DNA of 64,000 bases, taken from the IMG/VR virus record IMGVR_UViG_3300043570_001980, positions 277,991 to 341,990 of that record; one strand, 5' to 3'. The position numbers were made by a program, and so were the translations under genes. Below, piece after piece: positions 101 through 12,766 of the stretch (positions are counted from its first letter, which is position 1; each line of letters opens with the position of its first letter). The notes beneath the pieces were generated by a model. It did not search any database, had not been told where the DNA came from, and saw only the letters and a list, made by a program, of their open reading frames with translations.

Positions 101-553
101 ATGTACTATAGCAAGGTAGTAGCAAGTCTTTCGGCTATTCCGGATTTTATTGCACATTATGAACGAGAGCTAGGCTTGGCCAAGAGAGAATGTGTAATAG
201 GCGGACTAGTTGAAAAAAATATTAAAGAATTGCCGGGTATTACGGAACATCGTTTTAATCAGCTTCAGGAAATAGAAGCAGTACTCAATCTTCTTAATAT
301 ACAATTACGCAAAATCCGTCGACGCCATTTCCAAAAATATCTGGAAGGATATGCTCGTGCATTAACATCTCGAGACGCTGAAAAATATGTAGATGGTGAG
401 GATGAGGTTATTGATTTTGAAACTATTATCAACGAAGTGGCTCTATTGCGTAATAAATGGCTGGGTATTATGAAAGGACTTGATACTAAACAATGGCAAA
501 TGGGCCATATTGTTAGATTACGAACGTCCGGTATGGAAGACATTCAAGTATGA
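101..553 (+). CDS. uvsY: UvsY-like recombination mediator protein
   Basis: 150-aa helical protein with ..KYLEGY..TSRDAEKYVDGEDEV..KGLDTKQWQMGHIVRLR, the T4-type UvsY pattern. Confidence 0.75.
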   Translation: MYYSKVVASLSAIPDFIAHYERELGLAKRECVIGGLVEKNIKELPGITEHRFNQLQEIEAVLNLLNIQLRKIRRRHFQKYLEGYARALTSRDAEKYVDGEDEVIDFETIINEVALLRNKWLGIMKGLDTKQWQMGHIVRLRTSGMEDIQV

Positions 554-1314
554 ACAAAACTTATTTTATTTCTCCAGAAGAGAGTCATCAACACAGTTTG
601 CAAACATTAAATCAGTTATATGCATATGATGACTTTATGGAAAGTATTACCACAGTAGCCGACATGGGTTGCGGACGTGGATTAGACATTGAATGGTGGG
701 CCACCAGAACCACCAGGGATGAACGTGCTGACCCTTTAAATATTAAATGTTACGGAATTGATCAATTTGAACAATTTCCAATGGCTAGAAAATATCACAA
801 TACACAATATCAACGACAAGACTTTGAAGACCCAATTACAATACACAAAACAATGTTTGATGTGATTTGGTCGCATGACTCATTTCAGTATGTTATAAAC
901 CCGTTTCGAACATTGACCAACTGGAAAAAAGTCATGAATCCAAATGCCACATTGGTCATAATCTTGCCCCAGACTACCAACATGGAATTTAATACACAGG
1001 CGTTTGATCAGTTAGATTTTCAATATTACAATTGGACAATGGTCAGCCTAATTCATACCCTGGCAGTTTCGGGATTTGATTGCAGAGATGGTTATTTTTT
1101 AAAACAGCCAGATAGTCCCTGGTTACATGCAGTTGTGTACAACAGTGATCAATCTCCAAAAAATCCAAAAACCACTACCTGGTATGAATTAGCCGAGGCA
1201 AAGTTATTGCCAGTCACGGCTGTTGATAGCATAAACAAATATGGGTACGTAAAACAACGAGACCTAACACTACCCTGGATTAACAAAGCGTTAACCTGGT
1301 TAGGTAAAGAATAA
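550..1314 (+). CDS. Class I SAM-dependent methyltransferase
   Basis: VADMGCGRG motif I and FDVIWSHDSFQY. Confidence 0.8.
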   Translation: MNKTYFISPEESHQHSLQTLNQLYAYDDFMESITTVADMGCGRGLDIEWWATRTTRDERADPLNIKCYGIDQFEQFPMARKYHNTQYQRQDFEDPITIHKTMFDVIWSHDSFQYVINPFRTLTNWKKVMNPNATLVIILPQTTNMEFNTQAFDQLDFQYYNWTMVSLIHTLAVSGFDCRDGYFLKQPDSPWLHAVVYNSDQSPKNPKTTTWYELAEAKLLPVTAVDSINKYGYVKQRDLTLPWINKALTWLGKE

Positions 1315-1323
1315 GAGGAACCA

Positions 1324-2301
1324 ATGAAAAAAACTGCTTTTGTTACCGGAATGACCGGCCAGGATGGTCCGTACTTGGCAAAGTTATTGCTTGAAAAAGA
1401 TTATCAAGTGTTTGGACTAGTTAAAAGATATAGCAATCCAAATCTTGACAATATTAAATGGTTAGGAATTGAAAATGATATTGAACTAGTAACTGGTGAC
1501 ATCACCGACGAAAACTCAATGAATCATCTGATTAGAAGTTTAAAGCCAGTGGAAATATATAATCTTGCGGCACAGAGCTTTGTTGGAATTAGTTGGGATT
1601 TGAACAAGTTAACTACAGAAGTCAATTCAATAGGCCCTCTTAATATCCTTAACGCAATTAAAACGCATAGTCCAAATAGTCGTTTTTATCAAGCAAGCAC
1701 CAGCGAAATGTTTGGTAATGCTATAACAAACACTCAAAACGAAACCACACCATTTACTCCTCGTAGTCCGTATGGGGTTAGTAAATTGTATAGTCACTGG
1801 ATGACTGTGAACTTTCGAGAAAGCTATAGTCTCTATGCTTGCTCAGGAGTATTATTCAATCACGAAAGCCCATTACGTGGGAAAGAATTTGTTACACGCA
1901 AAGTTACAGATGCAGTGGCCCGTATTAAACTAGGATTGCAGGAAACAATTACACTGGGTAACATTGACAGTCGTCGGGATTGGGGCTTTGCTGGAGACTT
2001 TGTTGAAGCAATGTGGCTAATGTTACAGCAAGCCGAAGCTAAAGATTACGTTATTGCCACAGGAGAACAACATACTATTCGAGAACTATTAGATGTTGCG
2101 TTTAATTATGTCAATATTCCTGACTGGGAATCCAAAGTACTAACTGATCCACGATTTAAAAGACCTGCTGAGTTGTATAGTCTGTGCGGGGACAGTACCA
2201 GAGCCCGCAGTTTATTAGATTGGAAACCAAAAACAACATTTAAACAAATGATTGAAGATATGGTTAATGCAGATCTACAGAGATACCAAGTTCGGCAATA
2301 A
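1324..2301 (+). CDS. gmd: GDP-mannose 4,6-dehydratase
   Basis: TGMTGQDG, NLAAQSFV, QASTSEMFG, PRSPYGVSK, FNHESPLRG, RDWG motifs. Confidence 0.95.
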   Translation: MKKTAFVTGMTGQDGPYLAKLLLEKDYQVFGLVKRYSNPNLDNIKWLGIENDIELVTGDITDENSMNHLIRSLKPVEIYNLAAQSFVGISWDLNKLTTEVNSIGPLNILNAIKTHSPNSRFYQASTSEMFGNAITNTQNETTPFTPRSPYGVSKLYSHWMTVNFRESYSLYACSGVLFNHESPLRGKEFVTRKVTDAVARIKLGLQETITLGNIDSRRDWGFAGDFVEAMWLMLQQAEAKDYVIATGEQHTIRELLDVAFNYVNIPDWESKVLTDPRFKRPAELYSLCGDSTRARSLLDWKPKTTFKQMIEDMVNADLQRYQVRQ

Positions 2302-3102
2302 ACGTTGAATAGGATAGCCCTTGGCAATCTCGTCCAAGGTCCATTCAGAATGTGCTATCATATTCAACCAACTACTACGATCCGGCATTGCCGGATTTTC
2401 TATTTCTGCTAGATTAAATCCAGCAATTGGTGCAGCCAAACTGCTAGGGCCAACAAACGCAGGCACACCATTTATAATTGATTGCGGTCCAGGTCCGCTA
2501 CTCCAGTTAATAACTGCCCATGCGTTTTCCAATGATTGATCAAAATCAAAACAATCGTAGGAATTGGCAATTTTATTTGGAGAAATAGCTGTTGATATTA
2601 TTTTTTGTCTTGGGTGGGATCTAATAACAATTGGACGATTTGTGTATTTTTTTAAACGACTGCACACATCATTGACCCATGTTTGTGTATCCGGTAATCC
2701 AACCCATTGTTGACTGTCCTGACGTTGTAATGCAATCACAATGTGATCACCTGAGGTTCTCCAGGGCACTGGTGTTAATCCAAGATCCAGCGTCCTTGAT
2801 TCAGTTAAATCAATAAAATTATAACAAGATATTCCAGTACCGTTTAGTCCAATTTTCCATGTGTCTCCCCGACGCAACATTCCAATTTCAGCAACAATAA
2901 CAGGCTTGTGCTGATATGCTTTCCATACATCTCGATTGCCTTGCATCCGACCTGTCCATAACATCGACCATATCACAGCGACATCAGCATCATACTCGTT
3001 GTGGACCACTTGATGGCCGAGAGATTTCAGACCTTGTTCTATGGCAGCAAATACTGGTGCCGAGTTCAATGCACCAAAGTTATTAAATAGACTAAATTTC
3101 AT
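2275..3102 (-). CDS. Capsule-polysaccharide-synthesis-like (KpsS/KpsC-like, GT-B) putative glycosyltransferase
   Basis: IVIRSHPR ... AWAVINWSSG ... GVPAFV motif; paralogous to 6003-6965 and 6962-7771. Confidence 0.6.
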   Translation of the reverse strand: MKFSLFNNFGALNSAPVFAAIEQGLKSLGHQVVHNEYDADVAVIWSMLWTGRMQGNRDVWKAYQHKPVIVAEIGMLRRGDTWKIGLNGTGISCYNFIDLTESRTLDLGLTPVPWRTSGDHIVIALQRQDSQQWVGLPDTQTWVNDVCSRLKKYTNRPIVIRSHPRQKIISTAISPNKIANSYDCFDFDQSLENAWAVINWSSGPGPQSIINGVPAFVGPSSLAAPIAGFNLAEIENPAMPDRSSWLNMIAHSEWTLDEIAKGYPIQRLLPNLVSL

Positions 3103-3107
3103 TTGTG

Positions 3108-3113
3108 TAAATA
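3108..3113 (+). promoter_or_regulatory. T4-type late promoter core TAAATA
   Basis: TAAATA 7 nt upstream of ATG 3121, no Shine-Dalgarno. Confidence 0.55.
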
Positions 3114-3120
3114 GTTATAT

Positions 3121-3768
3121 ATGTATAAAATCAATTCACTCTGGTATTCTCCCGAACCTCTTAATGGATTCTTTAGCGAGCGTTTGCAGGATGCTGTAGA
3201 CGTTCATTATCAGCAACGCTACAGGTATTATGTATTTCAAAATATTCCACGCAAAAGAACCATGATTGACATTGGCGCCAATATTGGCATATTTGCTAGA
3301 CCTAGTGCAGAACATTTTGAACATGTAATATGTTTTGAACCAGTGCTTAAAAACTTCGAAGTCCTGCAAAAAAATCTAGAAAATTATAAAAATGTGGAAT
3401 TGCATAACCTGGGTCTTGGCGATAGAGATCAGACAGCAATATTTGAATTACAAACTCTCAAGTGTGGGCATACCAAACAAGTGGCAGAGTTTGTGCCCAA
3501 CCCAGAGTTTGAACAACACACTGGAGTGTTGACCACACTGGATCGATTCAATTTTCAATCTGTTGACTGGATCAAGATTGATGTTGAAGGTTTTGAAAAT
3601 GCAGTCCTTGAAGGAAGTCGCAATACTATACGTCAGAACAGACCTTGGTTGTTAATTGAGGACAACGGCCAACGAGATCAACACAGGCAATGGCTCAATG
3701 ATTTATGCGGACCATATGAATCCGCGCCAGTTAAAAGTAAGAGCAACACAATTTGGACCCCATTATGA
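3121..3768 (+). CDS. FkbM-family methyltransferase
   Basis: IDIGANIG, VICFEP, IKIDVEGFE motifs. Confidence 0.9.
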   Translation: MYKINSLWYSPEPLNGFFSERLQDAVDVHYQQRYRYYVFQNIPRKRTMIDIGANIGIFARPSAEHFEHVICFEPVLKNFEVLQKNLENYKNVELHNLGLGDRDQTAIFELQTLKCGHTKQVAEFVPNPEFEQHTGVLTTLDRFNFQSVDWIKIDVEGFENAVLEGSRNTIRQNRPWLLIEDNGQRDQHRQWLNDLCGPYESAPVKSKSNTIWTPL

Positions 3769-4481
3769 AACATTTACCGTATGAACGACAAGGTTTTAGT
3801 CAACATGACGAAACTGGAATTATTGAATATATGTTGGCAGGAATATCTGACCCAAAAAAAACTTTTGTAGAGATTGGCTTTGGCGACGGAACACAAAATA
3901 TGACTCTGGATTTGCTACATCAAGGGTATTGTGGTGTTGGCATAGACGGATGGGACTGGGATCCATCCGTGATCGAACGGTGGCCAGATCAATTGATTAA
4001 AATACAGAGAATGATTTCTCCAGACGATGTTGTACAATACATACCAGAACAGTATTGGCAACCGGACTTTTTTAGCCTAGACATTGACAGTTTTGATTAT
4101 GAAGTAGCGTCAGTCCTATTGCAATCAGGATTCTGCCCGGCCACTGTGTGTTGCGAGATCAACAAGAACTTTGGTAACGACTGGGCCAGTTTTCCTTATG
4201 TTGAAAAAACAATGAAAAAAGGCACATACAATAGGAAGTTTCATTATGGCTGTTCACTGTCAAAGTACAAAGACTTGTGGTCACAATATGGCTATGAGTT
4301 TTTTACATTTGACACAAGAGCAGTAAACGCATTTTGGTTTCACCCAGACCGAGTTGATATAAATTTAGATGTTCCTAGAAATCAAACACTTGATCAGATA
4401 GATACCTCTATTATAAAACAACAAATTTCCGATCACCAGTATTGGAACAATAAAGAAAAAGAAATTTATCAAACACTATGA
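3765..4481 (+). CDS. FkbM-related methyltransferase-fold protein
   Basis: FSQHDETGII, FVEIGFGDG, FFSLDIDSFDY, GCSL, VNAFW; ATGA coupling to the upstream stop fixes the start at 3765. Confidence 0.65.
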   Translation: MKHLPYERQGFSQHDETGIIEYMLAGISDPKKTFVEIGFGDGTQNMTLDLLHQGYCGVGIDGWDWDPSVIERWPDQLIKIQRMISPDDVVQYIPEQYWQPDFFSLDIDSFDYEVASVLLQSGFCPATVCCEINKNFGNDWASFPYVEKTMKKGTYNRKFHYGCSLSKYKDLWSQYGYEFFTFDTRAVNAFWFHPDRVDINLDVPRNQTLDQIDTSIIKQQISDHQYWNNKEKEIYQTL

Positions 4482-5305
4482 AATATTCAGTACTAACAAC
4501 ATTCCATGCCACTGGTTATCAAAAATATGCTAGCCGCATGATTGATACATTTTTACAAAATTGGCCTCAAGAAGTTGACCTATATGTTTACACAGAAGAT
4601 TGCACTATTACCCAATCTGCACCTAACTTATATGTGAGAGACCTGCATGCTGTGAGTCCAGAGATTGTAGCATTTAAACAGCGTTGGGGCAATGATCCAC
4701 GAGCCAACGGTTTAGTTGCCACAGGTCCTGTAGATCACAAAGGCAAGGCTCCTGGCCTGGGATTTAGATGGGATGCAATTCGTTTTAGTCATAAAATTTA
4801 TTCTGTGTGCCACGCCGCGAAAAATACCAATGCTGATATACTGTTTTGGATGGACGCTGACATGGTATGTCATACTCCTATCACAATAGATTTTATCAAC
4901 AAACAAATCACACCAGATGTAGGCCTGGCGTTTTTAGGTCGCGAAAAGAAATTTACAGAATGTGGATTGTATGCAATGAATTTAAAAAACTCAACCACAC
5001 AAGAATGGCTTAAAGAATTCCAGTTGGCATACGACTCGGACCGAGTTATGACCATGGCTGAATACAACGACTGTTGGGTATTTGATGAAACACGCAAAGA
5101 AGTACAGGTAAAGCATCCGGACTGGAAACAACTAAATTGGTCCAAGGGATTGATCAAGGGCGAAGGGCACCCGTTGATTAATACACCCTGGGGAGCATAT
5201 CTTGATCATCTTAAAGGCAAGCGTAAAGACGTAGGACGTAGTAATCTTAAAGATTTGGTACGTCCTAGAAGTGAATCTTATTGGTCCTCGTCGGTACCAG
5301 TCTGA
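4478..5305 (+). CDS. GT-A fold glycosyltransferase
   Basis: RFSHK, FWMDAD (DxD), ECG, HLKG motifs. Confidence 0.75.
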   Translation: MKYSVLTTFHATGYQKYASRMIDTFLQNWPQEVDLYVYTEDCTITQSAPNLYVRDLHAVSPEIVAFKQRWGNDPRANGLVATGPVDHKGKAPGLGFRWDAIRFSHKIYSVCHAAKNTNADILFWMDADMVCHTPITIDFINKQITPDVGLAFLGREKKFTECGLYAMNLKNSTTQEWLKEFQLAYDSDRVMTMAEYNDCWVFDETRKEVQVKHPDWKQLNWSKGLIKGEGHPLINTPWGAYLDHLKGKRKDVGRSNLKDLVRPRSESYWSSSVPV

Positions 5306-6006
5306 CTGTAGTGTTCTTTGCTGTGTTTGGCTTTGTGATGAGTCAGATACGGGCCGAGAACAGTATGTCTCATGGGTGTTTTATAAGGTTTAGCAAAGTC
5401 AGCGCATAGATCAGTGCAGTCGGCCTTGGACAATTTGATTGCCGCACCAAATACATCATTGTCATAGAATCGTCTGAGATCTTTGTAGTCTCTTTTCTTA
5501 TATCTACGAATGTATTCAGATTTAAATAATTTAAATTTTGGATGATGCGTATTAACAGCAAACACCCCAGTTTCGGGTACTAACCAATTGCCTGGATTGC
5601 CTTGTTTATCTTCGGTATATGATACTCCCAAATACAAAGATAAATGTGACGGATCAAGAATTTTATTCCAAAAATCCCACGGCATGGTACTTTCCGTAAT
5701 TACATCTGCGTCGATCCATAATATCCACTGTTTGTCAGTGTTATTCATGGCATGGATAAAACTATATGCCTTCTTTGCAAATCTTTTAACACTTCTATGA
5801 AAGTCTTCTTGTTGTAATGCGTAATAGTCCTTGTCTAATTGATCAAATTGAATTTGTTTAATTCTGTAATTATTAGAAAATGAAAAATCCTCAACATAAC
5901 AAGTGAGTTTATAATATGGGTTCCAATGTTTCAACCAGGAGTTGACACAGTCTTTACCAATCAAATCATAATATCGTTGATCAAAACTAGTGATAATTTC
6001 TATCAT
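5278..6006 (-). CDS. GT-A fold glycosyltransferase (paralog of 4478-5305)
   Basis: RFAKK, LWIDAD, ETG, HHKA; start at 6006 by ATGA coupling. Confidence 0.7.
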   Translation of the reverse strand: MIEIITSFDQRYYDLIGKDCVNSWLKHWNPYYKLTCYVEDFSFSNNYRIKQIQFDQLDKDYYALQQEDFHRSVKRFAKKAYSFIHAMNNTDKQWILWIDADVITESTMPWDFWNKILDPSHLSLYLGVSYTEDKQGNPGNWLVPETGVFAVNTHHPKFKLFKSEYIRRYKKRDYKDLRRFYDNDVFGAAIKLSKADCTDLCADFAKPYKTPMRHTVLGPYLTHHKAKHSKEHYSQTGTDEDQ

Positions 6007-6965
6007 TTGTTGGCCCATCTTTTCATGTGTCTCCAGCAATGCCCAGATTTAAGTTCACTATGGCTCCAGTGGAATTGACTTATGCGTTTTATCCACGACT
6101 CTCGGTCGTACATAATAGGATTTTCTATATTTGCTAGATTAATGTTGGCAATTTCTTTGCACTGACTTCGGTCCGGATCAGTAACAAACACCGGAATGCC
6201 CTGTAATGCAGATGCAACTGCAGGACTACTGTTATGATTAACCATGGCCCAACATCGATTAAGGTCATCTTCTAATCTTTCATTGGTGCTAAAATGAACA
6301 TTAAGCAATGCTCTTCCTCTACAAAGTTTTAGTAGACGCTCGCAGTATTTTTTTGCTCGTTTGTCTCCAGGGTGAGCTCTTATACGAATACTTCTTTGTG
6401 TAAACTTTCTTAATGTTGTTATGACATTTAGTGCCCAATCAACCACATTCCATCCTGCCATACTCCAACCACCATCTCGTTGAAGACAAATCAAAATATG
6501 GTCTCCATTTTTTCGCCAGGGGCTTAGTTCAACACCAATGGCTTGTTTTATAATCTCCCATCTGATGGGATCTGGTTCATGATCGCAATACTCGCCAGTG
6601 GTTGGAAAAACTCCATCGTAGCTATAACGCAACCAGTATCCAGGATTGGTAGTGTTTTTGTACAAAAACAAATTGCTATCTGCAATAACAGTTCTACCAC
6701 CAATGGCTTTTTGACGATCAATGATTTCTTGTCTAAACGCCAGATGAGCACCAGTTTTACCGTTCTCGTGAACCCAGCCCAATATCATTGCAACATCGGC
6801 TGGTTCGTATTGCATAGTTTCAATCACCTGTCCTTCATCCCCGACGTTAATTACCCCGTCGATAAAATATCTTAGTGTATTTGCCTTGTTATTTTGTTTT
6901 TGCAAAGACTCAGGTGTGGGCTCTTGTTTCTTAGGCAAGGTTGCTAGATAACTTATAACTTTCAT
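6003..6965 (-). CDS. Capsule-polysaccharide-synthesis-like putative glycosyltransferase
   Basis: IRIRAHPGD ... WAMVNHNSSPA ... GIPVFV ... DRESW ... FHWSHSELKSG. Confidence 0.6.
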   Translation of the reverse strand: MKVISYLATLPKKQEPTPESLQKQNNKANTLRYFIDGVINVGDEGQVIETMQYEPADVAMILGWVHENGKTGAHLAFRQEIIDRQKAIGGRTVIADSNLFLYKNTTNPGYWLRYSYDGVFPTTGEYCDHEPDPIRWEIIKQAIGVELSPWRKNGDHILICLQRDGGWSMAGWNVVDWALNVITTLRKFTQRSIRIRAHPGDKRAKKYCERLLKLCRGRALLNVHFSTNERLEDDLNRCWAMVNHNSSPAVASALQGIPVFVTDPDRSQCKEIANINLANIENPIMYDRESWIKRISQFHWSHSELKSGHCWRHMKRWANK

Positions 6966-7771
6966 TTTGTCAAAATCCTAAATGCAGTACCATCTCGTAA
7001 CTCGTCTACATGAAACTGCCCATAGGCAAGATGATGTGCCCATGCATGGAGTTTATCTCTATCAGGATAGTAGGGTGTTTCAATCTTGCTGAGATCTGTG
7101 TTGCCAACCGGCATTGCCGCATTTGATGGAGCCAACACAAATGCTGGAACTCCCTGCATGACTGCTTCTGTGGCCGCAACGCTGTTAAATGTTACTAATG
7201 CATGGACATCTCTTGCCAAGATAGCAGATAATGGATTCAATTGTACACGGTCTATTCTTTTTGGCTCACGTTGTCTGATAATAATTGGCCGGTCTGTGTA
7301 TTTTTTTAAAGTTGCCACAGTTTCAATGAGCCAGGTTTCCAAATCAATTCCATAAAACTTGCAGGGTTTTTCGTCAGGCGCCGCAACAATTATTACTTTT
7401 CCATATTTTCTTGGGTGCAATTGAATTCGAAGTTTTTTCCATCTATCATCAGGCCTGGGAACTATTTCGTTGTGTTGAAGATCATTTTTTACAATTCTGT
7501 GCCAATTCTTCCACCCTTGCGGATTCTGATCATTTGGTTGATTACCAAAGTAGCCGCTGTCCATGTAATAGAATGTTTTATTATCTTCCCAGCAACTGCG
7601 CATAATTTTGTGTTTTAAAATCCCACGCAGTACCACGGGCCTATCATCAACTACTACATCATAATAATAATCAAAGTCGTCGGAGTTGGTTATTTTTCCT
7701 CCGCATCCTTGGGCAAACATATTGATATATTCATCTTTGCCGTTCTTACTAAGAAATAACCACTCGCTCAT
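6962..7771 (-). CDS. Capsule-polysaccharide-synthesis-like putative glycosyltransferase
   Basis: YMDSGYF ... ALVTFNSVAA ... GVPAFV ... LAYGQF..ELRDG; start at 7771 by TAATG coupling. Confidence 0.6.
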   Translation of the reverse strand: MSEWLFLSKNGKDEYINMFAQGCGGKITNSDDFDYYYDVVVDDRPVVLRGILKHKIMRSCWEDNKTFYYMDSGYFGNQPNDQNPQGWKNWHRIVKNDLQHNEIVPRPDDRWKKLRIQLHPRKYGKVIIVAAPDEKPCKFYGIDLETWLIETVATLKKYTDRPIIIRQREPKRIDRVQLNPLSAILARDVHALVTFNSVAATEAVMQGVPAFVLAPSNAAMPVGNTDLSKIETPYYPDRDKLHAWAHHLAYGQFHVDELRDGTAFRILTK

Positions 7772-8448
7772 TATAATGTCCTTTGTAAACAATACTCAGT
7801 GAGTATGCGTTCTCTGTGCCACTCTTCACTTTGTGGTGTGTCAGCAAACTCGTGGAAGCATGGAGTGCCCAAGGTATAGTGCAAGAGCTTGGCCGCGGGG
7901 TTTGGCCCGTATTCATCGGGCAACCAATTCCATTCAGGCGGCAGTTCGCCAAGTCGTTCATCATCGATCCAGGTAAATCGATGTAGTTCAGCCCCTGTGG
8001 CTTTCTGTATAAATCCTGGGGTTAGCTTACGATTAGGAAAACTTCCGCAGTTCCACAAGATAACGCTACTCCAATTTTTTCTAGGATAATCTTCATTTTT
8101 TGATCCAAGATATTTCTCAGTCATCTTTGTTTTATAATCATGTTTGACTACCAATACATCCTTGTAGGGGTTCTGTAATTCCCATAATTTAGTAATGTCG
8201 TCACGCACAACCATATCACCATCTATAAAAATGGCCCACCCTGTAAATTGCATCAAGTGCGGCACAAGGAAACGACTGTAGATAAATTGATTGCTACCAT
8301 CTGTGTGTGTTTCTTTATAGTCTTTAAATAAATTTAATGCCAGCGGGATAATCTGTACTGGTTGTGTTGCATGCCTAATAATACTATTAGCACAGGTATG
8401 AAACGCAATTGCTTCTCTAGGATCGTATCCTATGAAAATTGGAATCAT
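7771..8448 (-). CDS. GT8-like glycosyltransferase
   Basis: IFIGYDPRE, F..SRFLVP, FIDGDM, YPRKNWSSV, EWNWL, LLHYTLGTP motifs. Confidence 0.85.
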   Translation of the reverse strand: MIPIFIGYDPREAIAFHTCANSIIRHATQPVQIIPLALNLFKDYKETHTDGSNQFIYSRFLVPHLMQFTGWAIFIDGDMVVRDDITKLWELQNPYKDVLVVKHDYKTKMTEKYLGSKNEDYPRKNWSSVILWNCGSFPNRKLTPGFIQKATGAELHRFTWIDDERLGELPPEWNWLPDEYGPNPAAKLLHYTLGTPCFHEFADTPQSEEWHRERILTEYCLQRTL

Positions 8449-9200
8449 TTTCTTTCAATGTCCTCTTCGATACAGTTCTCACCGTATTGAATTTCAATTA
8501 ATTTTAACGGCTGGTTGGTTTCGTTACACAGCATGTGCCATTGGCCTTTGTCGATAAACACATATTCGTGCAGACCGTATGTGCCAACCAGATCGTGATC
8601 ACTGCTGGAGTCTAGTGTATAAACTGCGGCTTCACCTTCAGCAACAAACCAAAACTCTGCACGTTGATCATGACGTTGCATGCTCAAACATGTCTTGGGC
8701 GTCACTGTTAGTTCTTTGAGTTTGGTGTTTGCGCCTACTTCGTGTAACACACGATAGTATCCCCAGGCACGTGAGGTCCGGGGCTTCTTCCAATCCTCGA
8801 GAATCCATGAACTAGAATTCTTCTTGTCCTCTCCACCAACACCAAACACAAACTCTACGTCATCGAACACCATTTCTGGAATGTTATTCTGGGTACGATC
8901 GCCGCCGTTGGCAAACACAATAGTATCAGTTGGGTAACGTTGTTTGATTAACTCAATTGCATTGCAACTGGAGTTGTCATCATCGTTGTAAACCACAACT
9001 TCGTCAACAATGCTCAACGCACTGATTAGTTCAAAACGTTCACTCATAGGCATAAAAGGCCTACCTTTTTTACGAGTAAGCCATTCATCAGAGTTGAGTC
9101 CGACAATCAATATGTCGCCTAGTTGTTTTGCTGATTTAAAGTAAGCAAGGTGCCCGGAGTGTATGGGATCAAACCCACCTGTAACAAGTACGATTTTCAT
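8445..9200 (-). CDS. Cytidylyl/adenylyltransferase (RfaE/TagD-like) fused to a mannose-6-phosphate-isomerase-type cupin
   Basis: TGGFDPIHSGH, FANGGDR, KKNSSS; C-terminal RAWGYY..LSMQRH..RAEFW..LIEIQYG...EEDIER. Confidence 0.88.
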   Translation of the reverse strand: MKIVLVTGGFDPIHSGHLAYFKSAKQLGDILIVGLNSDEWLTRKKGRPFMPMSERFELISALSIVDEVVVYNDDDNSSCNAIELIKQRYPTDTIVFANGGDRTQNNIPEMVFDDVEFVFGVGGEDKKNSSSWILEDWKKPRTSRAWGYYRVLHEVGANTKLKELTVTPKTCLSMQRHDQRAEFWFVAEGEAAVYTLDSSSDHDLVGTYGLHEYVFIDKGQWHMLCNETNQPLKLIEIQYGENCIEEDIERK

Positions 9201-9205
9201 AGAAA

Positions 9206-9233
9206 TATTTATCTATGTATATTATGGTAAATA
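9206..9233. promoter_or_regulatory. Back-to-back late promoter cores
   Basis: TATTTA 9206-9211 (minus strand, 5 nt from ATG 9200) and TAAATA 9228-9233 (4 nt from ATG 9238). Confidence 0.6.
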
Positions 9234-9237
9234 TAAT

Positions 9238-9819
9238 ATGGACCACTTTTATCAAGACATAGACGGATTTATGAGCGTTAGAAACACAATCATGCTTGAC
9301 ATGGTGTTAGAACAATTTCCTAAAAAAGGCACATGGGTTGAGCTAGGATCATGGACAGGTCGTAGCGCGGCATATTGTGTGGTTGAGTTAATCAATCGAG
9401 ATAAACTAGGTGAATTCTATTGTGTAGACAGCTGGCAGGGCGAAACTGACATAGCATACGATCAAGGCGTGATACAGGACATGGAAAATATTTTCCGTAA
9501 AAATGTCAATCCAGTGATAGATTCAATTACCATGTTGACCATGATGAGTTGGGCCGCCGCAGAAAAATTCAAAGATGAATCTGTGGATTTTTGTTATGTG
9601 GATGCTGGACATAGTTACGAAGCAGTAACAAAAGATCTCACTGCATGGTGGCCAAAACTGTGCCCTGGTGCCATGTTTGGTGGTGATGACTACACAAAAG
9701 GTTATCCAGGAGTGCAACAAGCAGTTTGGGACTTTTTTGGACCAATGAATATAAAAGTACGCAGATCAGGACGTTGTTGGTTGGTCACAAAACCAACAGC
9801 CGGTAATAATTTAATTTAA
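9238..9819 (+). CDS. Class I SAM methyltransferase (Methyltransf_24-like)
   Basis: VELGSWTGRS, CVDSW, YVDAGHSYE, GDDY. Confidence 0.85.
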   Translation: MDHFYQDIDGFMSVRNTIMLDMVLEQFPKKGTWVELGSWTGRSAAYCVVELINRDKLGEFYCVDSWQGETDIAYDQGVIQDMENIFRKNVNPVIDSITMLTMMSWAAAEKFKDESVDFCYVDAGHSYEAVTKDLTAWWPKLCPGAMFGGDDYTKGYPGVQQAVWDFFGPMNIKVRRSGRCWLVTKPTAGNNLI

Positions 9820-9826
9820 ATAAAGA

Positions 9827-10465
9827 ATGAAACAAGACTGGTTAGAGTTTTACCGAAAAAACTATTACAATTTATTAAACCCACGTGTTAGCGCAATAAA
9901 GCGAGGGTTAGTCGATGGCTTATATCAAAGAGCACACGGATTTAACATTATGTTTGCTGAACTGGTAACACGCGGTCAAGATCAGTATCATATAATTGAA
10001 ACTGGCACTCTACGAAATCCCGGAAACTGGAAAGACGGCCAGAGTGCAAAATTATTCACTGAATTTGTGGACATTCACAACGGATCTGTAAGGTCAGTAG
10101 ATATTGATCCGGGTGCATGTTCCTCAGCATCAGCCGCAATACGGTCCAAGAACTTTACAGTTACCTGTAGTGACAGCGTAACTTGGTTAAGCAAACAACC
10201 AGATTTATCTACAGTTGATTTGTTCTACTTAGATTCGTGGGACGTCAAGTGGGAAAATGATCTGGACAGCGCCGAGCACCATTTAAGCGAATTTAAGGCA
10301 ATTGAACCTTACTTGAAATCTGGATGTATTGTGGCCATAGATGACAACAGTAGATTCAAAAACACAAACCAAAGAACTGGCAAAGGTCGTAGGATTGTTG
10401 AATACCTTGAGTCAAAAGGTAAACACCCTGTATACGACGAATACCAAATAATTTATAAGTTTTAA
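9827..10465 (+). CDS. Methyltransferase-fold protein (Methyltransf_24-like)
   Basis: IIETGT, SVDID, DLFYLDS, VAIDDN, GKG. Confidence 0.7.
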   Translation: MKQDWLEFYRKNYYNLLNPRVSAIKRGLVDGLYQRAHGFNIMFAELVTRGQDQYHIIETGTLRNPGNWKDGQSAKLFTEFVDIHNGSVRSVDIDPGACSSASAAIRSKNFTVTCSDSVTWLSKQPDLSTVDLFYLDSWDVKWENDLDSAEHHLSEFKAIEPYLKSGCIVAIDDNSRFKNTNQRTGKGRRIVEYLESKGKHPVYDEYQIIYKF

Positions 10466-10466
10466 A

Positions 10467-11258
10467 ATGATCATCGATACCTTATTGTTTAACAACGAAT
10501 TTGACATGCTAGACATACATCTAGCCATTACCAACCACTATGTAGATCGCTGGATAGTGTTGGAAGCAAGTAGAACATTCAGTGGCATTGAAAAACCCTA
10601 CCACCTGACTGACAATTTGAAAAAGTACAATGAAAAGTATCCGGGAAGAATACAAGTAATTCAACAACCACTGACTGCTGATCAAACCAACCTAATCTGC
10701 GAAACCACAATGAGACAAGGATTTAAAACTGCACTCAGCAGTTGCAGTTTGGATGATATTGTTATTCACGGAGACCTTGACGAAGTCATTGATCCAACCA
10801 AGTGGAGTAAAATTCTTAATCAGATGGATCAACATAATCGGCCAGTGAGTTGTGGATTTGATATGTATATGTACCGAGTTGATCAACGTGCAGATCGTGG
10901 CTGGAAAGGTAGTGTAGTTGCCAGGCGGCGCATGTTTGAAACACCACATGACTTATACAAAGGCGACCGAGCAGTGGTCAAAAGAAAAAACCGCAATCAT
11001 TGTGTTGGCATAAACGAATCAGTTGGTTGGCATTGGACCTGGATGGGCAGTGACGATCTAATAAAAAACAAAGTGATTAGCTGTATTGAAAGTCAGCACA
11101 GAGATCCCGAACAAGTACTACATGCTTTTAAACAGTTAGACACAATATCAGCTATCAATCACAAGTGTACTACTCATGTTGTGCCTACTGTGTATCCTGA
11201 TCCTGTACAACAAGTATTACAACAATATCCACACTTCTGGCATAACCCACCTTTATGA
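10467..11258 (+). CDS. GT17-family glycosyltransferase (beta-1,4-GlcNAc-transferase-like)
   Basis: FNNEFDML, VLEASRTFSGIEKP, GDLDEV, GWHWTW. Confidence 0.8.
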   Translation: MIIDTLLFNNEFDMLDIHLAITNHYVDRWIVLEASRTFSGIEKPYHLTDNLKKYNEKYPGRIQVIQQPLTADQTNLICETTMRQGFKTALSSCSLDDIVIHGDLDEVIDPTKWSKILNQMDQHNRPVSCGFDMYMYRVDQRADRGWKGSVVARRRMFETPHDLYKGDRAVVKRKNRNHCVGINESVGWHWTWMGSDDLIKNKVISCIESQHRDPEQVLHAFKQLDTISAINHKCTTHVVPTVYPDPVQQVLQQYPHFWHNPPL

Positions 11259-11974
11259 CCACAGTTGACTGTGCATGTTTGATACATGGAGACAAATATA
11301 ACTGGTCCTATGTTGATACTTTATACCATATGATCTGTAGAAACGTCAGCATGGACGTACGGTTTCATGTTTACACAGAAGCTTCTCGTGGTGTACCGTC
11401 ACCTTTTATCAAACACGAATTAATAGATTGGCCAGGAGTTTCTGGACCTAGACAAAGTTGGTGGTACAAGTTACAACTTTTTAACCCTGAACATTTTCAA
11501 GGCAGAATGTTGTACCTAGATCTTGACACCGTTATATTTGAAAACATAGACTGTTTATGGAGCGATAGTAGCAAGTATTTTTGGACAATTAAAGATTTTA
11601 AATACCTATGGCGTGATTGGGCAGGAATTAACTCAAGTTTAATGCTTTGGGACACAGTTAAATTTAGCTACATCTGGAACGATTTTTTGACACAAGATCT
11701 GTCAGACGTAATAAAAAAATACCCAGGAGACCAAGATTATTTGTCCGCAATATTAAACCCAAGAGACATACGGTTTTTTGACAGTAATTTAATTAAAAGC
11801 TGGCGCTGGCAGTTGTTGGACGGAGGACTTGATTTTAAAACAAGAAAATACCGTCGACCAGGCGCAGGCACATTGTTAGACCCCACAACACGTATTGCTA
11901 TTTTTCACGGAAATCCCAAACCTCATGAAATTACTGACCCGGTTGTGCAGAAGTTCTGGATCAAGTATAAATAA
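11255..11974 (+). CDS. GT-A (GT8-like) glycosyltransferase
   Basis: GDKY, WWYKLQLF, LYLDLD, NSSLM, GDQDY, FHGNPKP. Confidence 0.8.
   Translation: MTTVDCACLIHGDKYNWSYVDTLYHMICRNVSMDVRFHVYTEASRGVPSPFIKHELIDWPGVSGPRQSWWYKLQLFNPEHFQGRMLYLDLDTVIFENIDCLWSDSSKYFWTIKDFKYLWRDWAGINSSLMLWDTVKFSYIWNDFLTQDLSDVIKKYPGDQDYLSAILNPRDIRFFDSNLIKSWRWQLLDGGLDFKTRKYRRPGAGTLLDPTTRIAIFHGNPKPHEITDPVVQKFWIKYK
11966..11973 (+). promoter_or_regulatory. Late promoter TATAAATA
   Basis: Perfect T4 late consensus, followed by GGAG SD and ATG 11995. Confidence 0.75.
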
Positions 11975-11994: not shown

Positions 11995-12561
11995 ATGGCT
12001 ACACGCACATTTAAGTTTTATGGCAAAGCATTCACTACAGGTGGTCCTGTAACAGTGAGTTTAAATTTTAACAATCAACCAGTGTTTACAGGCGCTGTTT
12101 CTGCATCAACAGGAGCAACCCCTGGGAATAATAACGAAGGCCTATCAGAACTGTTTACATTTGAAGCAGACACTTCTGTATATGGTGACATTCCTTTGAC
12201 TTTAACTGTGACCGGTGGTGATTTATTCTACGGCAGAATTACTGCTAATTACGGCGGCGACGTATACACAGTAGATCCAAGTCGTTTACCAGACAGAAAC
12301 AATCCCGACTCTATTCCTGCTGGACCAATTTTTAGTGCTGATGATCCAGGAAGAACCTTTGTAACTGCATCTGTGGATAATTATGTACCAGTAGATTATA
12401 ATGTCACCGATGGAAGAGAAAACGTTCAGATTAACGGAGTAGCGGTTCCTGATAAAAATCCAACTGACCCTGCACAAGTTGGTAGATGGCAATATTTAAT
12501 TACTAACGAAAGCACATTGACTTGCACACAGAAAGTTGTTAGGGCATTGCCTATTGAATAA
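11995..12561 (+). CDS. Hypothetical beta-rich protein, probably a virion component
   Basis: T/G/V-rich 188 aa with its own late promoter and terminator. Confidence 0.55.
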   Translation: MATRTFKFYGKAFTTGGPVTVSLNFNNQPVFTGAVSASTGATPGNNNEGLSELFTFEADTSVYGDIPLTLTVTGGDLFYGRITANYGGDVYTVDPSRLPDRNNPDSIPAGPIFSADDPGRTFVTASVDNYVPVDYNVTDGRENVQINGVAVPDKNPTDPAQVGRWQYLITNESTLTCTQKVVRALPIE

Positions 12562-12562
12562 A

Positions 12563-12663: not shown

Positions 12664-12674
12664 AAAAATCCTGG

Positions 12675-12703
12675 TTGACCATTAAATAGGGTTTTGCTAT
12701 AAT
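12675..12703 (+). promoter_or_regulatory. Early sigma70-type promoter
   Basis: TTGACC-17-TATAAT with TTTGC extended -10. Confidence 0.85.
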
Positions 12704-12766
12704 TATACAATAATAAGTAGCAAGGAATACAAGTTTTGTATTGTTTGCAACAAGATCAACTAACAG

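What the first reader, a model, noticed from the sequence alone, without database searches (positions are those of the whole stretch)
550..11974. Fifteen-gene glycan synthesis and tailoring island under late-type promoters
Seen: Gmd, a cytidylyltransferase-cupin fusion, about eight putative glycosyltransferases of several types (GT8-like, GT17, other GT-A, KpsS-like) and five methyltransferase-fold proteins, in alternating-strand operons with TAAATA cores at 3108, 9206 and 9228. Known: Gmd makes the precursor of GDP-fucose, GDP-rhamnose and GDP-perosamine. Inference: late expression suggests a complex O-methylated glycan placed on the virion or host surface rather than on DNA, comparable in scale to giant-virus glycosylation.
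Basis: partly seen in the sequence, partly recalled or inferred. Interest (0 to 1): 0.62.

Follow-up and report, generated by a model that had tools for sequence, protein, structure and literature searches.

The report
Variable late-expressed glycan island in lake phage
A 342-kb T4-like phage from lake water carries a 16-gene sugar-building island, very probably switched on late in infection, with a fixed core and swappable outer genes like a bacterial O-antigen locus; such islands are known in aquatic phages, and what this one puts its sugars on is still unproven.

Summary
Window 550-11974 has 15 tightly packed genes, 16 with 11995-12561. They are an intact Gmd, a nucleotidyltransferase-cupin fusion, eight glycosyltransferase-fold proteins and five methyltransferase-fold proteins. 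The eight comprise GT8, a GT8-like protein, GT17, two GT6/GT8-like GT-A paralogues and three KpsC/WbbB-like paralogues. None has a membrane segment.

TAAATA is a real promoter signal here. It is depleted genome-wide and piles up before starts, including portal, sheath and baseplate genes. A gp55-type late sigma factor is encoded. TAAATA-N5-ATG before the core operon is kept in 34 of 35 distinct upstream sequences from relatives, and this spacing predicts leaderless mRNAs.

The island always lies between uvsY and an AAA gene. Six genes were found in all 18 complete islands of relatives. Gmd, the methyltransferases and GT17 are swapped, in one relative for an FnlA/RmlD/2-epimerase module.

The genome has no thymidylate-synthase-family hydroxymethylase, no C5 DNA methylase, no initiating lipid-carrier transferase and no Wzx flippase.

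The best reading is a cytoplasmic, late, strain-variable methylated glycan, most likely on virion proteins (about 0.45). Remodelling of host envelope glycan is the main rival, and DNA is unlikely. It is a new variant of the "LPS gene" islands known in cyanophages and pelagiphages.

The parts
101..553 (+). uvsY-like recombination mediator; conserved left flank of the island. Its stop overlaps the start of the first island gene (ATGA).
   Evidence: phrog_231, E 1.6e-12; present in 18 of 18 complete islands of relatives; sequence.
550..1314 (+). g01, class I SAM methyltransferase (Methyltransf_11). Variable gene with no TAAATA; probably read through from uvsY.
   Evidence: present in 8 of 18 islands; upstream sequence.
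1324..2301 (+). g02, GDP-mannose 4,6-dehydratase with catalytic motifs intact. Variable gene.
   Evidence: PF16363 399 bits; TIGR01472 405.6 bits against a cut-off of 415; motifs; present in 7 of 18 islands.
2379..2397 (+). Terminator-like hairpin after Gmd; likely end of the uvsY-g01-g02 transcript.
   Evidence: 8-bp stem, 5 GC pairs, T-rich tail.
2275..3102 (-). g03, KpsC/WbbB-like GT-B paralogue that keeps the R.HP motif. Core gene; no TAAATA upstream in most relatives.
   Evidence: Paralogy with g08, E 8e-25; alignment A1; found in 18 of 18 islands at 36-87% identity; upstream sequences.
3108..3113 (+). TAAATA late-type -10 core, 7 nt before the ATG of g04.
   Evidence: kept in the close relatives L004 and L028.
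3121..3768 (+). g04, FkbM-family methyltransferase.
   Evidence: PF05050 58 bits; TIGR01444 89 bits.
3753..4481 (+). g05, probable FkbM-like methyltransferase fold (a lead only). The true start is probably the ATG at 3765.
   Evidence: Atlas score 0.95 to PF05050-bearing clusters, and the Atlas record starts at residue 5; hhalign not significant; present only in the closest relatives.
4478..5305 (+). g06, GT-A glycosyltransferase with a DxD motif; its best fold matches are retaining GT6 and GT8 enzymes.
   Evidence: AlphaFold pLDDT 93.8; Foldseek alpha-1,3-GalT, BoGT6a, XXYLT1 and LARGE1, E about 1e-7 to 1e-8; D126 and D128 invariant in 54 sequences; family of 1280 clusters at 50% identity.
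5278..6039 (-). g07, paralogue of g06 (GT-A, DxD). The probable start is at 6006, overlapping the stop of g08.
   Evidence: BLASTP against g06, E 2e-9; its orthologue in L005 has 242 aa.
6003..6965 (-). g08, KpsC/WbbB/KrkA-like (beta-Kdo-transferase-like) GT-B with the R.HP motif. Core gene.
   Evidence: AlphaFold pLDDT 92.9; Foldseek top 26 hits are all Kdo transferases; VIA-align Z 14.6, rmsd 3.7, 246 aa to KpsC; 2025 homologues, all unnamed.
6962..7792 (-). g09, third paralogue of the KpsC-like family. Its lineage lacks the HP motif. Core gene.
   Evidence: weak match to DUF6716, E 1.3e-3.
7771..8448 (-). g10, GT8 retaining glycosyltransferase (FIDGDM). One of the two best-conserved island genes, at 76-96% identity.
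   Evidence: PF01501 32.6 bits; phrog_28018, E 1e-35; homologues in Caulobacter, Pelagibacter and Synechococcus phages.
8445..9200 (-). g11, fusion of an HxGH nucleotidyltransferase (RfaE-II/HldC, ECT and TagD-like) with a type-II-PMI-like cupin. First gene of the core operon; 76-93% identity in relatives.
   Evidence: PF01467 60 bits and PF01050 70 bits; TIGR02199 79 bits, below its cut-off; PDB matches ECT, HldC and TagD; 420 IMG/VR stretches.
9206..9211 (-). TAAATA late-type core, 5 nt before the ATG of g11. It predicts a leaderless mRNA for g11-g10-g09-g08-g07.
   Evidence: TAAATA-N5-ATG kept in 34 of 35 distinct upstream sequences of relatives.
9228..9233 (+). TAAATA late-type core, 4 nt before the ATG of g12 (divergent from g11).
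9238..9819 (+). g12, Methyltransf_24 methyltransferase (start corrected from 9163).
   Evidence: PF13578 68 bits; start.
9827..10465 (+). g13, Methyltransf_24-like methyltransferase with its own TAAATA (9817-9822), 4 nt before the ATG.
   Evidence: PF13578 25.5 bits, just under the cut-off of 26.3.
10467..11258 (+). g14, GT17-like glycosyltransferase. Variable gene.
   Evidence: PF04724 60 bits against a cut-off of 26, covering profile positions 75-232 of 348; present in 7 of 18 islands.
11255..11974 (+). g15, GT-A glycosyltransferase (phrog_1962, weakly GT8-like). Core gene at 45-95% identity.
11995..12561 (+). g16, a small Thr/Gly/Asn/Pro-rich protein of unknown fold, with TAAATA (11968-11973) at -27 and a GGAG Shine-Dalgarno site. 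Last gene before the terminator; variable.
   Evidence: no match in Pfam, PHROGs or the Atlas; family also found at the same place in L005, L013, L072 and L079.
12591..12613 (+). Strong terminator-like hairpin; right end of the island.
   Evidence: 10-bp stem.
12675..12795 (+). Two sigma-70-type promoters (11 of 12 matches, TG-extended -10) in front of the flanking AAA gene at 12829-13860. They serve as a contrast to the island's promoter class.
   Evidence: TGcTATAAT plus AGGAG conserved in relatives; phrog_1250.

Best explanation
The island is a self-contained cytoplasmic glycan factory of a lake-water T4-like jumbo phage. Its core is transcribed late from gp55-type TAAATA promoters, mostly as leaderless mRNAs.

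Shown: the enzyme folds and families, the promoter statistics and their conservation, and the core/variable architecture.

Inferred chain of events: the conserved first operon makes an activated precursor (g11, nucleotidyltransferase plus PMI-like isomerase) and lays down an invariant inner glycan (g10 GT8, then the KpsC-like g09 and g08, together with g03 and g15). The swappable outer genes then finish the glycan. Here these are Gmd, which supplies a GDP-6-deoxyhexose; two GT6/GT8-like GT-A enzymes; GT17; and four or five sugar methyltransferases. They add strain-specific, O-methylated 6-deoxy sugars.

The most likely acceptor is one or more virion proteins, because all the enzymes are soluble, no lipid-carrier initiation or export gene is present, and expression coincides with that of the structural genes. 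This would give each phage strain its own surface 'serotype', as in chloroviruses and glycosylated mycobacteriophages.
For: - Families and folds.
- Soluble enzymes: no hydrophobic 19-mer reaches 1.6 in any island protein.
- No Bac_transf, no WecA/MraY family and no Wzx in the genome, with working controls.
- Late promoters: TAAATA occurs 198 times against 465 expected. It lies at -13..-10 before 23 ORFs (0.4 expected) and at -32..-23 before 31 ORFs (1.1 expected).
- Genes that carry the motif include baseplate wedge, portal, tail sheath and virion structural proteins.
- A gp55-type late sigma factor is encoded (phrog_12791, 257 bits), followed by gp47 and gp46 homologues.
- TAAATA-N5-ATG before g11 is kept in 34 of 35 distinct upstream sequences while the surrounding sequence diverges.
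- The neighbouring AAA gene instead keeps a sigma-70 extended -10 and a Shine-Dalgarno site.
- Core and variable genes. An alternative 6-deoxy-HexNAc module with methyltransferases, GT32 and GT2 occurs in L013, and GT25 in L006.
- In Caulobacter phage CcrColossus the homologous GT8 + KpsC-like pair lies, with a methyltransferase and further glycosyltransferases, right after a tail protein and before the lysis genes.
- Precedents: chlorovirus capsid glycans with a conserved core, virus-encoded GMD and a predicted methyltransferase domain in A064R (PMC5408694; PMC7826918 abstract); glycans on mycobacteriophage capsid and tail-tube subunits (as cited in PMC12619734).
Against: - There is no expression, proteomic or glycan data. 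No RNA run holds the sequence.
- In T4 some non-structural genes also have late promoters, so late does not mean virion (my own knowledge).
- Here the island lies beside recombination and replication genes, not structural ones.
- g01-g02 (methyltransferase and Gmd) and g03 have no TAAATA.
- KpsC, KpsS and WbbB act on lipid-linked host glycans at the cytoplasmic membrane face (my own knowledge), which fits the host-envelope rival.
- No acceptor protein has been identified.
- The substrates of g11 and of the KpsC-like enzymes are unassigned, and no CMP-Kdo or CMP-nonulosonate synthetase is encoded.
Confidence: 0.45

Rival explanations
1. Remodelling of host envelope glycan. The soluble enzymes act at the cytoplasmic face on Und-PP-linked or lipid-linked host O-polysaccharide or capsule intermediates, in an ABC-transporter-dependent pathway. 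They cap or replace these with methylated or Kdo-type residues, so that the infected cell or its debris no longer binds this phage or competing phages.
For: The best structural relatives of g03, g08 and g09 are KpsC, WbbB and KrkA. By my own knowledge these work on lipid-linked capsule or O-antigen intermediates, and both beta-Kdo and methyl groups are known chain terminators in such pathways. GT8 is typical of LPS core synthesis. This is the published reading of the comparable islands in P-SSM2 (PMC1079782) and in pelagimyophages (PMC7029224). Cassette diversity could track host O-antigen diversity.
Against: Exclusion of competitors would be expected early, but the core operon carries the same promoter class as structural genes. 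The genome has no initiating transferase, flippase or membrane protein for this, so everything would depend on host export accepting a foreign glycan. Eight glycosyltransferases plus precursor supply is far more than capping needs.
Confidence: 0.3
2. DNA hypermodification. The glycosyltransferases put a glycan on a modified base of the phage DNA to escape restriction, as in T-even phages or in the MT/5mYOX/GT clusters.
For: Phage glycosyltransferases related to LPS and teichoic-acid enzymes do put mono- to trisaccharides, heptose included, on 5hmC (bioRxiv 10.1101/2023.12.21.572611). The island lies next to recombination and replication genes. Diversifying cassettes are what an arms race with restriction would produce.
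Against: The 95%-complete genome has no thymidylate-synthase-family hydroxymethylase and no C5 DNA methyltransferase. It has no Tet/JBP match either, but that control rang nowhere, so that result is inconclusive. There is no T4 alpha-glucosyltransferase homologue. The methyltransferases are of small-molecule or sugar types (FkbM, Methyltransf_11, Methyltransf_24). The promoter class is late rather than replication-phase. Eight glycosyltransferases exceed any known DNA glycan.
Confidence: 0.05
3. Another cytoplasmic or released product. The island might make a glycolipid, a free or secreted oligosaccharide, or a slime around the infected cell (as with chlorovirus hyaluronan or chitin). Alternatively it might mainly redirect nucleotide-sugar pools.
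For: KpsC-type enzymes start on phosphatidylglycerol-type lipids (my own knowledge). No acceptor protein is evident. Further sugar loci elsewhere in the genome (GalE, DegT aminotransferases, radical SAM enzymes, a TauE-type membrane protein) point to a wider sugar metabolism.
Against: No synthase-type membrane glycosyltransferase or exporter lies in the island. A conserved core with variable outer glycosyltransferases points to a defined, recognised structure rather than to pool manipulation.
Confidence: 0.15

Closest known systems
'LPS gene' clusters and hypervariable glycosyltransferase islands of T4-like cyanomyophages and pelagimyophages (P-SSM2: 24 genes in two clusters, PMC1079782; pelagimyophage host-recognition cluster, PMC7029224)
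   Same: They are aquatic T4-like phages with clusters of sugar epimerases or dehydratases (Gmd 46-50% identical), GT8-type transferases and rfaE-like nucleotidyltransferases. The N-terminal domain of g11 is 54% identical to a protein of S-SSM7. Content varies between related genomes, and the function has not been tested. Pelagibacter phage Mosig even has the GT8 + KpsC-like pair together with methyltransferases.
   Different: The site differs: uvsY|AAA gene here, against the tail-fibre region in those phages. Here there is a fixed six-gene core with a strictly conserved late, leaderless-type promoter, a nucleotidyltransferase-cupin fusion not found in any cultured phage (no full-length hit), and three KpsC-like paralogues. 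The published interpretation (host O-chain change against co-infection) fits the promoter class found here poorly.
Chlorovirus (PBCV-1) capsid glycosylation machinery
   Same: Virus-encoded cytoplasmic glycosyltransferases, a viral GMD that supplies 6-deoxyhexoses, and methylated sugars (a predicted methyltransferase domain in A064R). A conserved glycan core carries strain-variable decoration (PMC5408694; PMC7826918 and PMC9614988). The number of genes is similar.
   Different: That system has a eukaryotic host and is a different virus realm. Its glycan structures and acceptor (Vp54) are established by experiment, whereas nothing is established here. No orthology beyond Gmd was shown.
Mycobacteriophage virion glycosylation (Freeman et al. 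2023, as cited in PMC12619734)
   Same: Phage-encoded soluble glycosyltransferases modify capsid and tail-tube subunits, and the glycans vary between phages.
   Different: Those systems have one to a few glycosyltransferases placed beside the structural genes, Gram-positive-type hosts and no precursor-supply genes on this scale. Membership cannot be tested here without virions.
Retaining beta-Kdo glycosyltransferases KpsC/KpsS (GT107), WbbB (GT99) and KrkA
   Same: The predicted fold of g08 matches them best and over its full length (Z 12.2-14.6). g08 and g03 carry an R.HP motif in the C-terminal domain, in the stretch (profile positions 176-252) where the only, non-significant, sequence match to WbbB lies (E 1.1).
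   Different: Sequence identity is 11-12%. The catalytic Asp nucleophile could not be placed, the g09 lineage lacks HP, and the phage encodes no CMP-Kdo synthetase. The donor may be another CMP- or NDP-sugar.
T4 late promoters (TATAAATA, gp55-dependent)
   Same: An A/T-rich -10-only element, a gp55-type sigma factor is encoded, and the motif sits before structural genes.
   Different: The core is shortened to TAAATA; only 12 full TATAAATA copies occur in the genome. In about 23 genes it sits 4-7 nt from the ATG. With T4's spacing (transcription start 6 nt after the box, my own knowledge), the start would fall on or next to the start codon, leaving no Shine-Dalgarno site.

Membership tests
GDP-mannose 4,6-dehydratase (g02) | Full-length match to the family models | tested here: met
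   PF16363 399 bits over positions 1-332 of 332. TIGR01472 405.6 bits, 10 bits under the strict equivalog cut-off of 415.
GDP-mannose 4,6-dehydratase (g02) | SDR cofactor and catalytic motifs (GxxGxxG, S/T-x-E, YxxxK, NHES) | tested here: met
   GMTGQDG, STSE, YGVSK and NHESPLRG are all read in the translation.
GDP-mannose 4,6-dehydratase (g02) | A partner enzyme that finishes the sugar (GMER/Rmd/Per/ColD) | tested here: inconclusive
   There is none in the island. Elsewhere in the genome lie two SDRs (one scores as GalE) and two DegT aminotransferases below any equivalog cut-off. A bifunctional GMD is known in PBCV-1 (PMC5408694).
Retaining beta-Kdo glycosyltransferases GT99/GT107 (g03, g08, g09) | KpsC/WbbB-type GT-B-like fold | tested here: met
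   g08 model: KpsC Z 14.6 (246 aa, rmsd 3.7), WbbB 13.2, KrkA 12.2; other GT-B 11.3 or less. The Foldseek top 26 hits are all Kdo transferases.
Retaining beta-Kdo glycosyltransferases GT99/GT107 (g03, g08, g09) | HP motif that binds the CMP phosphate | tested here: inconclusive
   R.HP is conserved in the g08 and g03 lineages and absent from the g09 lineage. Residue-level equivalence with the HP of WbbB or KpsC was not verified, because only an E 1.1 profile match covers that stretch.
Retaining beta-Kdo glycosyltransferases GT99/GT107 (g03, g08, g09) | Asp nucleophile and CMP-beta-Kdo as donor | not testable with these tools
   No structural superposition output was available. The genome has no KdsB/NeuA family member, so the donor would have to come from the host.
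GT8 (g10) | Pfam match above the cut-off and a DxD motif | tested here: met
   PF01501 32.6 bits against a cut-off of 24.3, covering only profile positions 67-139. FIDGDM is present in the sequence.
GT17 (g14) | Pfam match above the cut-off | tested here: met
   PF04724 60 bits against a cut-off of 26, covering profile positions 75-232 of 348. Activity was not tested.
Bifunctional GMP/PMI (ManC, type II PMI) for g11 | N-terminal NTP_transferase (PF00483) guanylyltransferase domain | tested here: not met
   The N-terminus is instead a CTP_transf_like HxGH domain (PF01467; matches ECT, HldC and TagD). Only the C-terminal cupin matches ManC (PF01050 70 bits; TIGR01479 positions 357-460).
RfaE domain II / HldC heptose-1-phosphate adenylyltransferase for the g11 N-terminus | Score above the equivalog cut-off | tested here: not met
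   TIGR02199 79.4 bits against a cut-off of 181.5. It is the best hit, but the substrate remains unassigned.
T4-type late promoter | A -10-only A/T box recognised by a gp55-type sigma factor, placed before late (structural) genes | tested here: met
   The core here is TAAATA, not the full TATAAATA.
T4-type late promoter | Transcription start mapped downstream of the box, with late timing | not testable with these tools
   No RNA run holds the sequence.
Seroconverting Gtr-type or Wzx/Wzy-type surface glycan systems | Membrane glycosyltransferase or flippase, or an initiating phosphoglycosyl transferase | tested here: not met
   No membrane segment in any island protein. PF02397, PF00953 and PF01943 are absent from the genome, with working controls.
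Phage DNA glycosylation systems (hmC/hmU or MT-5mYOX-GT) | A base-activating enzyme (ThyA-family hydroxymethylase, or C5 methyltransferase plus TET) | tested here: not met
   PF00303 and PF00145 are absent, with working controls. PF12851 is absent, but its control rang nowhere.
Phage virion glycosylation (mycobacteriophage type) | Glycan shown on capsid or tail subunits | not testable with these tools
   This needs virions. Only context exists: the promoter class is the same as for structural genes, and the homologous module lies next to a tail gene in CcrColossus.

The most novel reading that the evidence does not exclude
A widespread lineage of 330-350-kb lake phages gives its virions strain-specific 'serotypes'. 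A conserved inner glycan, primed by the nucleotidyltransferase-cupin fusion, GT8 and KpsC-like enzymes, is decorated by exchangeable cassettes of methylated 6-deoxy sugars. All of it is expressed from leaderless gp55-dependent late transcripts. This would be a bacterial-virus counterpart of chlorovirus capsid glycans. It would mean that something in the lake, such as host lectin-like receptors, grazers or enzymes, selects on phage surface sugars as phages select on O-antigens.
Probability: 0.35. Interest if true: 0.72.

Novelty: new variant of a known kind. Interest (0 to 1): 0.5.

Why it matters
Glycosyltransferase and 'LPS gene' islands are common in aquatic T4-like phages. For twenty years they have been explained, without tests, as tools to change the host surface. 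Here the promoter class, its strict conservation, the soluble enzymes and the lack of export genes together give a concrete, checkable argument that at least this island works late and in the cytoplasm. That points to the virion as target. The fixed-core, variable-periphery layout gives a natural experiment, because related phages differ only in the cassette. The TAAATA-N5-ATG arrangement is a separate, testable prediction of leaderless late mRNAs in a T4-like phage. The nucleotidyltransferase-cupin fusion and the phage KpsC-like family (about 2000 unnamed homologues) are enzymes worth assaying.

Tried and rejected
- Megablast of the island against cultured phages found nothing. The nearest cultured relatives are only about 48% identical in the replicative helicase.
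- Single-sequence PDB searches of the open genes and of the cupin alone were uninformative. Profile searches against the PDB gave no significant hit.
- Pfam at E up to 10 gave only hints.
- hhalign of g05 against the FkbM alignment was not significant; only the FkbM-like 'D.D..F..E' stretch aligned.
- The Atlas gave nothing for g16.
- The 'moraphage' lineage paper (PMC12619734) describes phages of up to 307 kb that fall outside the T4 group. I judged it a different lineage.
- The look-up of sequencing runs found only lake-water DNA data sets and no RNA. I therefore did not use read laying, since contigs cannot show starts or timing.
- Pseudaminic/legionaminic or Kdo activation encoded by the phage was rejected.
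- My first matrix used a start for g12 that was off by one base. This was corrected.

Full report
WHERE THE WINDOW LIES. The window is the last 64 kb of a single 341,990-bp IMG/VR virus record (G000:C1:277991-341990). The record is 95% complete by CheckV and has 40.7% G+C. It is a T4-like jumbo phage. It encodes a UvsY-like mediator and gp41-type and other helicases, ribonucleotide reductase and DNA ligase. It also encodes a tail sheath, a baseplate wedge and a portal, and a gp55-type late sigma factor followed by gp47 and gp46 homologues. No cultured phage is close: megablast finds nothing. The replicative helicase is 48% identical to that of Pseudomonas phage PA5oct and 43-51% identical to those of Agrobacterium Atu_ph07, Sinorhizobium phage Phosso and a 349-kb Vibrio phage. 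The exact sequence occurs in lake-water metagenomes of 20 studies; 18 of the 20 runs are flagged as possible sources of this DNA, so they are not independent support. No RNA data set holds it. The island's fusion gene alone retrieves 420 IMG/VR stretches, among them genomes of 331-353 kb.

THE OBSERVATION. Positions 550-11974 hold 15 tightly packed ORFs. Family scans confirm the following.
- g01 (550-1314): Methyltransf_11.
- g02 (1324-2301): GDP-mannose 4,6-dehydratase. PF16363 399 bits; TIGR01472 405.6 bits against a cut-off of 415; GxxGxxG, STSE, YxxxK and NHESPLRG are present.
- g04 (3121-3768): FkbM methyltransferase.
- g10 (7771-8448): GT8.
- g11 (8445-9200): a CTP_transf_like HxGH nucleotidyltransferase fused to a type-II-PMI-like cupin.
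- g12 (9238-9819) and g13 (9827-10465): Methyltransf_24.
- g14 (10467-11258): GT17.
- g15 (11255-11974): a phrog_1962 glycosyltransferase, weakly GT8-like.

THE GENES THAT PFAM LEFT OPEN. g03, g08 and g09 are paralogues (E 8e-25 to 5e-13). With a 29-sequence alignment (A1), g08 folds at pLDDT 92.9. Its 26 best Foldseek matches are all retaining beta-Kdo transferases. VIA-align gives KpsC Z 14.6 (246 residues, rmsd 3.7), WbbB 13.2 and KrkA 12.2, against 11.3 or less for ordinary GT-B enzymes. The g08 and g03 lineages keep an 'R.HP' motif, and the g09 lineage has lost it.

g06 and g07 are paralogues of a very large unnamed family, 1280 clusters at 50% identity. D126 and D128 (DxD) are invariant in that family. 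The g06 model (pLDDT 93.8) is a GT-A fold whose best matches are retaining GT6 and GT8 enzymes: alpha-1,3-GalT, BoGT6a, XXYLT1 and LARGE1.

g05 is FkbM-like only as a lead (Atlas 0.95; hhalign not significant).

PROMOTERS. I tested whether the motif means anything in this genome.
- It occurs 198 times against 465 expected from base composition.
- Its first base lies at -13..-10 before 23 of 368 ORFs (0.4 expected) and at -32..-23 before 31 ORFs (1.1 expected). The second class has a GGAG-type Shine-Dalgarno site in between.
- Genes with the motif include baseplate wedge, portal, tail sheath and several virion structural proteins, and the phage has a gp55-type sigma factor.
- Among 35 distinct upstream sequences of g11 orthologues (76-100% protein identity), 34 have TAAATA, always 5 nt before the ATG. 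The rest of the upstream sequence, and even the neighbouring gene, differs.
- As a contrast, the flanking AAA gene keeps a TGcTATAAT extended -10 and an AGGAG site in all relatives. The only strong sigma-70 matches of the region lie there, after a 10-bp-stem terminator at 12591-12613. Inside the island, sigma-70-like matches are at chance level: 39 against 41 expected.

With T4's geometry, where the start lies 6 nt after the box (my own knowledge), TAAATA-N5-ATG puts the start on the A of the ATG. The core operon g11-g10-g09-g08-g07 is translationally coupled by overlapping stops and starts and would be a leaderless late mRNA. So would g12, g13 and, nearly, g04.

There are limits. g01-g02 overlap uvsY's stop, have no box of their own and are probably read through from uvsY to the hairpin at 2379-2397. 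g03 has no box in most relatives. None of this is RNA evidence.

COMPARATIVE ANATOMY. In 18 IMG/VR loci that hold both flanks, the island always lies between uvsY and the AAA (phrog_1250) gene and measures 8.0-12.3 kb.
- g11 and g10 are present in all 18 at 76-96% identity.
- g03, g08, g09 and g15 also score in all 18, but at only 30-60% identity outside the closest relatives. Because g03, g08 and g09 are paralogues, cross-matching could inflate their tally; the gene maps show separate orthologues in most relatives but not in all.
- Gmd, the two Methyltransf_24 genes and GT17 occur in 7 of 18, g01 in 8 of 18, and g05 and g16 in 5 of 18.
- One relative (L013) carries instead an FnlA/CapE-type dehydratase, an RmlD-like reductase, a UDP-GlcNAc 2-epimerase, two other methyltransferases, a GT32 and a GT2. 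That is a 6-deoxy-L-HexNAc module in place of the GDP-6-deoxyhexose module. L006 has a GT25.

This is the layout of an O-antigen locus: an invariant priming and inner part with an exchangeable outer part.

G+C in the island (38-42%) equals that of the genome, so it is not a recent import.

Cultured phages hold smaller versions. The GT8 and KpsC-like genes lie side by side in Caulobacter phages CcrColossus and CcrPW, and two genes apart in Pelagibacter phage Mosig. In CcrColossus the module, which also holds a sialyltransferase-like gene, a methyltransferase and a GT9, follows a 1665-aa tail protein and precedes the lysis genes. In Mosig it lies with two methyltransferases and a sulfotransferase.

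WHAT THE GLYCAN GOES ON.
DNA: the genome lacks a thymidylate-synthase-family hydroxymethylase and a C5 DNA methyltransferase, with working controls. It has no T4 alpha-glucosyltransferase homologue. A Tet/JBP search was also negative, but its control rang nowhere. The methyltransferases are of sugar or small-molecule types. I put DNA at about 0.05.

Host surface: this is the published reading of similar islands (PMC1079782; PMC7029224). It fits the KpsC/WbbB resemblance, because those enzymes act on lipid-linked glycans at the cytoplasmic membrane face. But no island protein has a membrane segment. The genome has no initiating phosphoglycosyl transferase and no Wzx. Exclusion of competing phages would call for early rather than late expression. 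I put it at about 0.3.

Virion proteins: soluble enzymes are made together with the structural proteins, and a defined core carries strain-specific decoration. The homologous module is tail-adjacent in CcrColossus. There are precedents in chloroviruses: a viral GMD, sometimes bifunctional and yielding GDP-D-rhamnose; a predicted methyltransferase domain in A064R; and a conserved glycan core (PMC5408694; PMC7826918). Mycobacteriophages are another precedent (cited in PMC12619734). I put this at about 0.45, and other products at about 0.15. g16 is a small Thr/Gly/Asn/Pro-rich late protein with a strong Shine-Dalgarno site. It varies with the cassette and is a candidate acceptor or partner, but nothing supports this beyond position.

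PATHWAY (inferred). The N-domain of g11 is closest to RfaE-II/HldC, ethanolamine-phosphate cytidylyltransferase and TagD, and all matches are below the equivalog cut-offs. Its cupin is closest to the mannose-6-phosphate isomerase domain of ManC. A fused ketose-aldose isomerase and nucleotidyltransferase would feed a manno-configured sugar, either mannose or D-glycero-D-manno-heptose, into an activated pool. The substrate remains open.

Gmd turns GDP-mannose into GDP-4-keto-6-deoxymannose. No reductase or aminotransferase lies in the island. The genome does have two more SDRs (one scores as GalE), two DegT aminotransferases, radical SAM enzymes and a GT1-like gene at about 101-106 kb and 147-158 kb.

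The KpsC-like enzymes suggest a CMP-activated ulosonic acid. No CMP-sugar synthetase or NeuB is encoded, so the host would have to supply the donor.

COMPARISON AND NOVELTY. The kind, a variable glycosyltransferase and sugar-nucleotide island in an aquatic T4-like phage, is known. The new points are:
- the fixed core with an exchangeable periphery at a fixed site;
- the strictly conserved late, leaderless-type promoter;
- the nucleotidyltransferase-cupin fusion, which has no full-length match in cultured phages;
- the triplicated KpsC-like family.
I rate it a new variant of a known kind, with interest 0.5.

HOUSEKEEPING. No other genetic code and no spliced model were involved.

Noticed in passing
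whole genome G000; in the window e.g. 9206-9211(-), 9228, 9817, 13970, 25264-26325(-), 48937: At least 23 ORFs have TAAATA only 4-7 nt before the start codon and no Shine-Dalgarno site. This predicts a class of leaderless gp55-dependent late mRNAs. A second class has the box at -23..-32 with a GGAG site.
   Followed up: partly
G000:C1:101391-106101 (L084 6391-11101): A second sugar locus: a GT1-like gene, UDP-glucose 4-epimerase (TIGR01179 279.7 bits, above the cut-off), an unknown gene and a B12-binding radical SAM enzyme.
   Followed up: partly
G000:C1:147369-158245 (L085 5369-16245): A third sugar locus: a TauE/SafE-type membrane protein, an SDR, two DegT-family aminotransferases (PseC-like, below the cut-off) and a radical SAM enzyme. 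It could process Gmd's keto-sugar, but this was not tested.
   Followed up: partly
window 12562-12828 and 12829-13860: The flanking AAA gene (phrog_1250) has two near-consensus sigma-70 promoters with a TG-extended -10 and an AGGAG site, conserved in all relatives. It is a clean internal example of the other promoter class.
   Followed up: yes
G000:C1:205770-211000 (L099): A gp55-type late sigma factor (301 aa, longer than T4's 185 aa) is followed by an SbcD-like gene (gp47 homologue), an unknown 483-aa gene and an SbcC-like gene (gp46 homologue), roughly as in the T4 gene order 55-47-46.
   Followed up: partly
window 25264-26325 (-): A radical-SAM-domain protein (phrog_14086) on the minus strand with TAAATA-N4-ATG. 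Function unknown.
   Followed up: no
window 35755-37341 (+): A tail-spike or pre-neck-appendage-like protein (several PHROG tail-spike families) with TAAATA at -30 and a Shine-Dalgarno site; possibly a glycan-binding or glycan-cleaving receptor protein.
   Followed up: no
window 47015-48388 (+): An ATP-dependent DNA ligase also has TAAATA 2 nt before its ATG. Either this is chance or the motif is not limited to virion genes. It is a caution against reading 'late box' as 'structural'.
   Followed up: no
L096 (Caulobacter phage CcrColossus 98832-103385) and L097 (Pelagibacter phage Mosig 124832-130666): Cultured phages carry mini-islands with the same GT8 and KpsC-like genes plus methyltransferases. 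In CcrColossus the island lies between a tail protein and the lysis genes. These are tractable systems in which to test virion glycosylation.
   Followed up: partly
window 11995-12561 (+): g16 is a small late protein rich in Thr, Gly, Asn and Pro, with no detectable relatives outside this lineage. It is replaced by unrelated 129-133-aa ORFs in relatives that carry other cassettes.
   Followed up: partly
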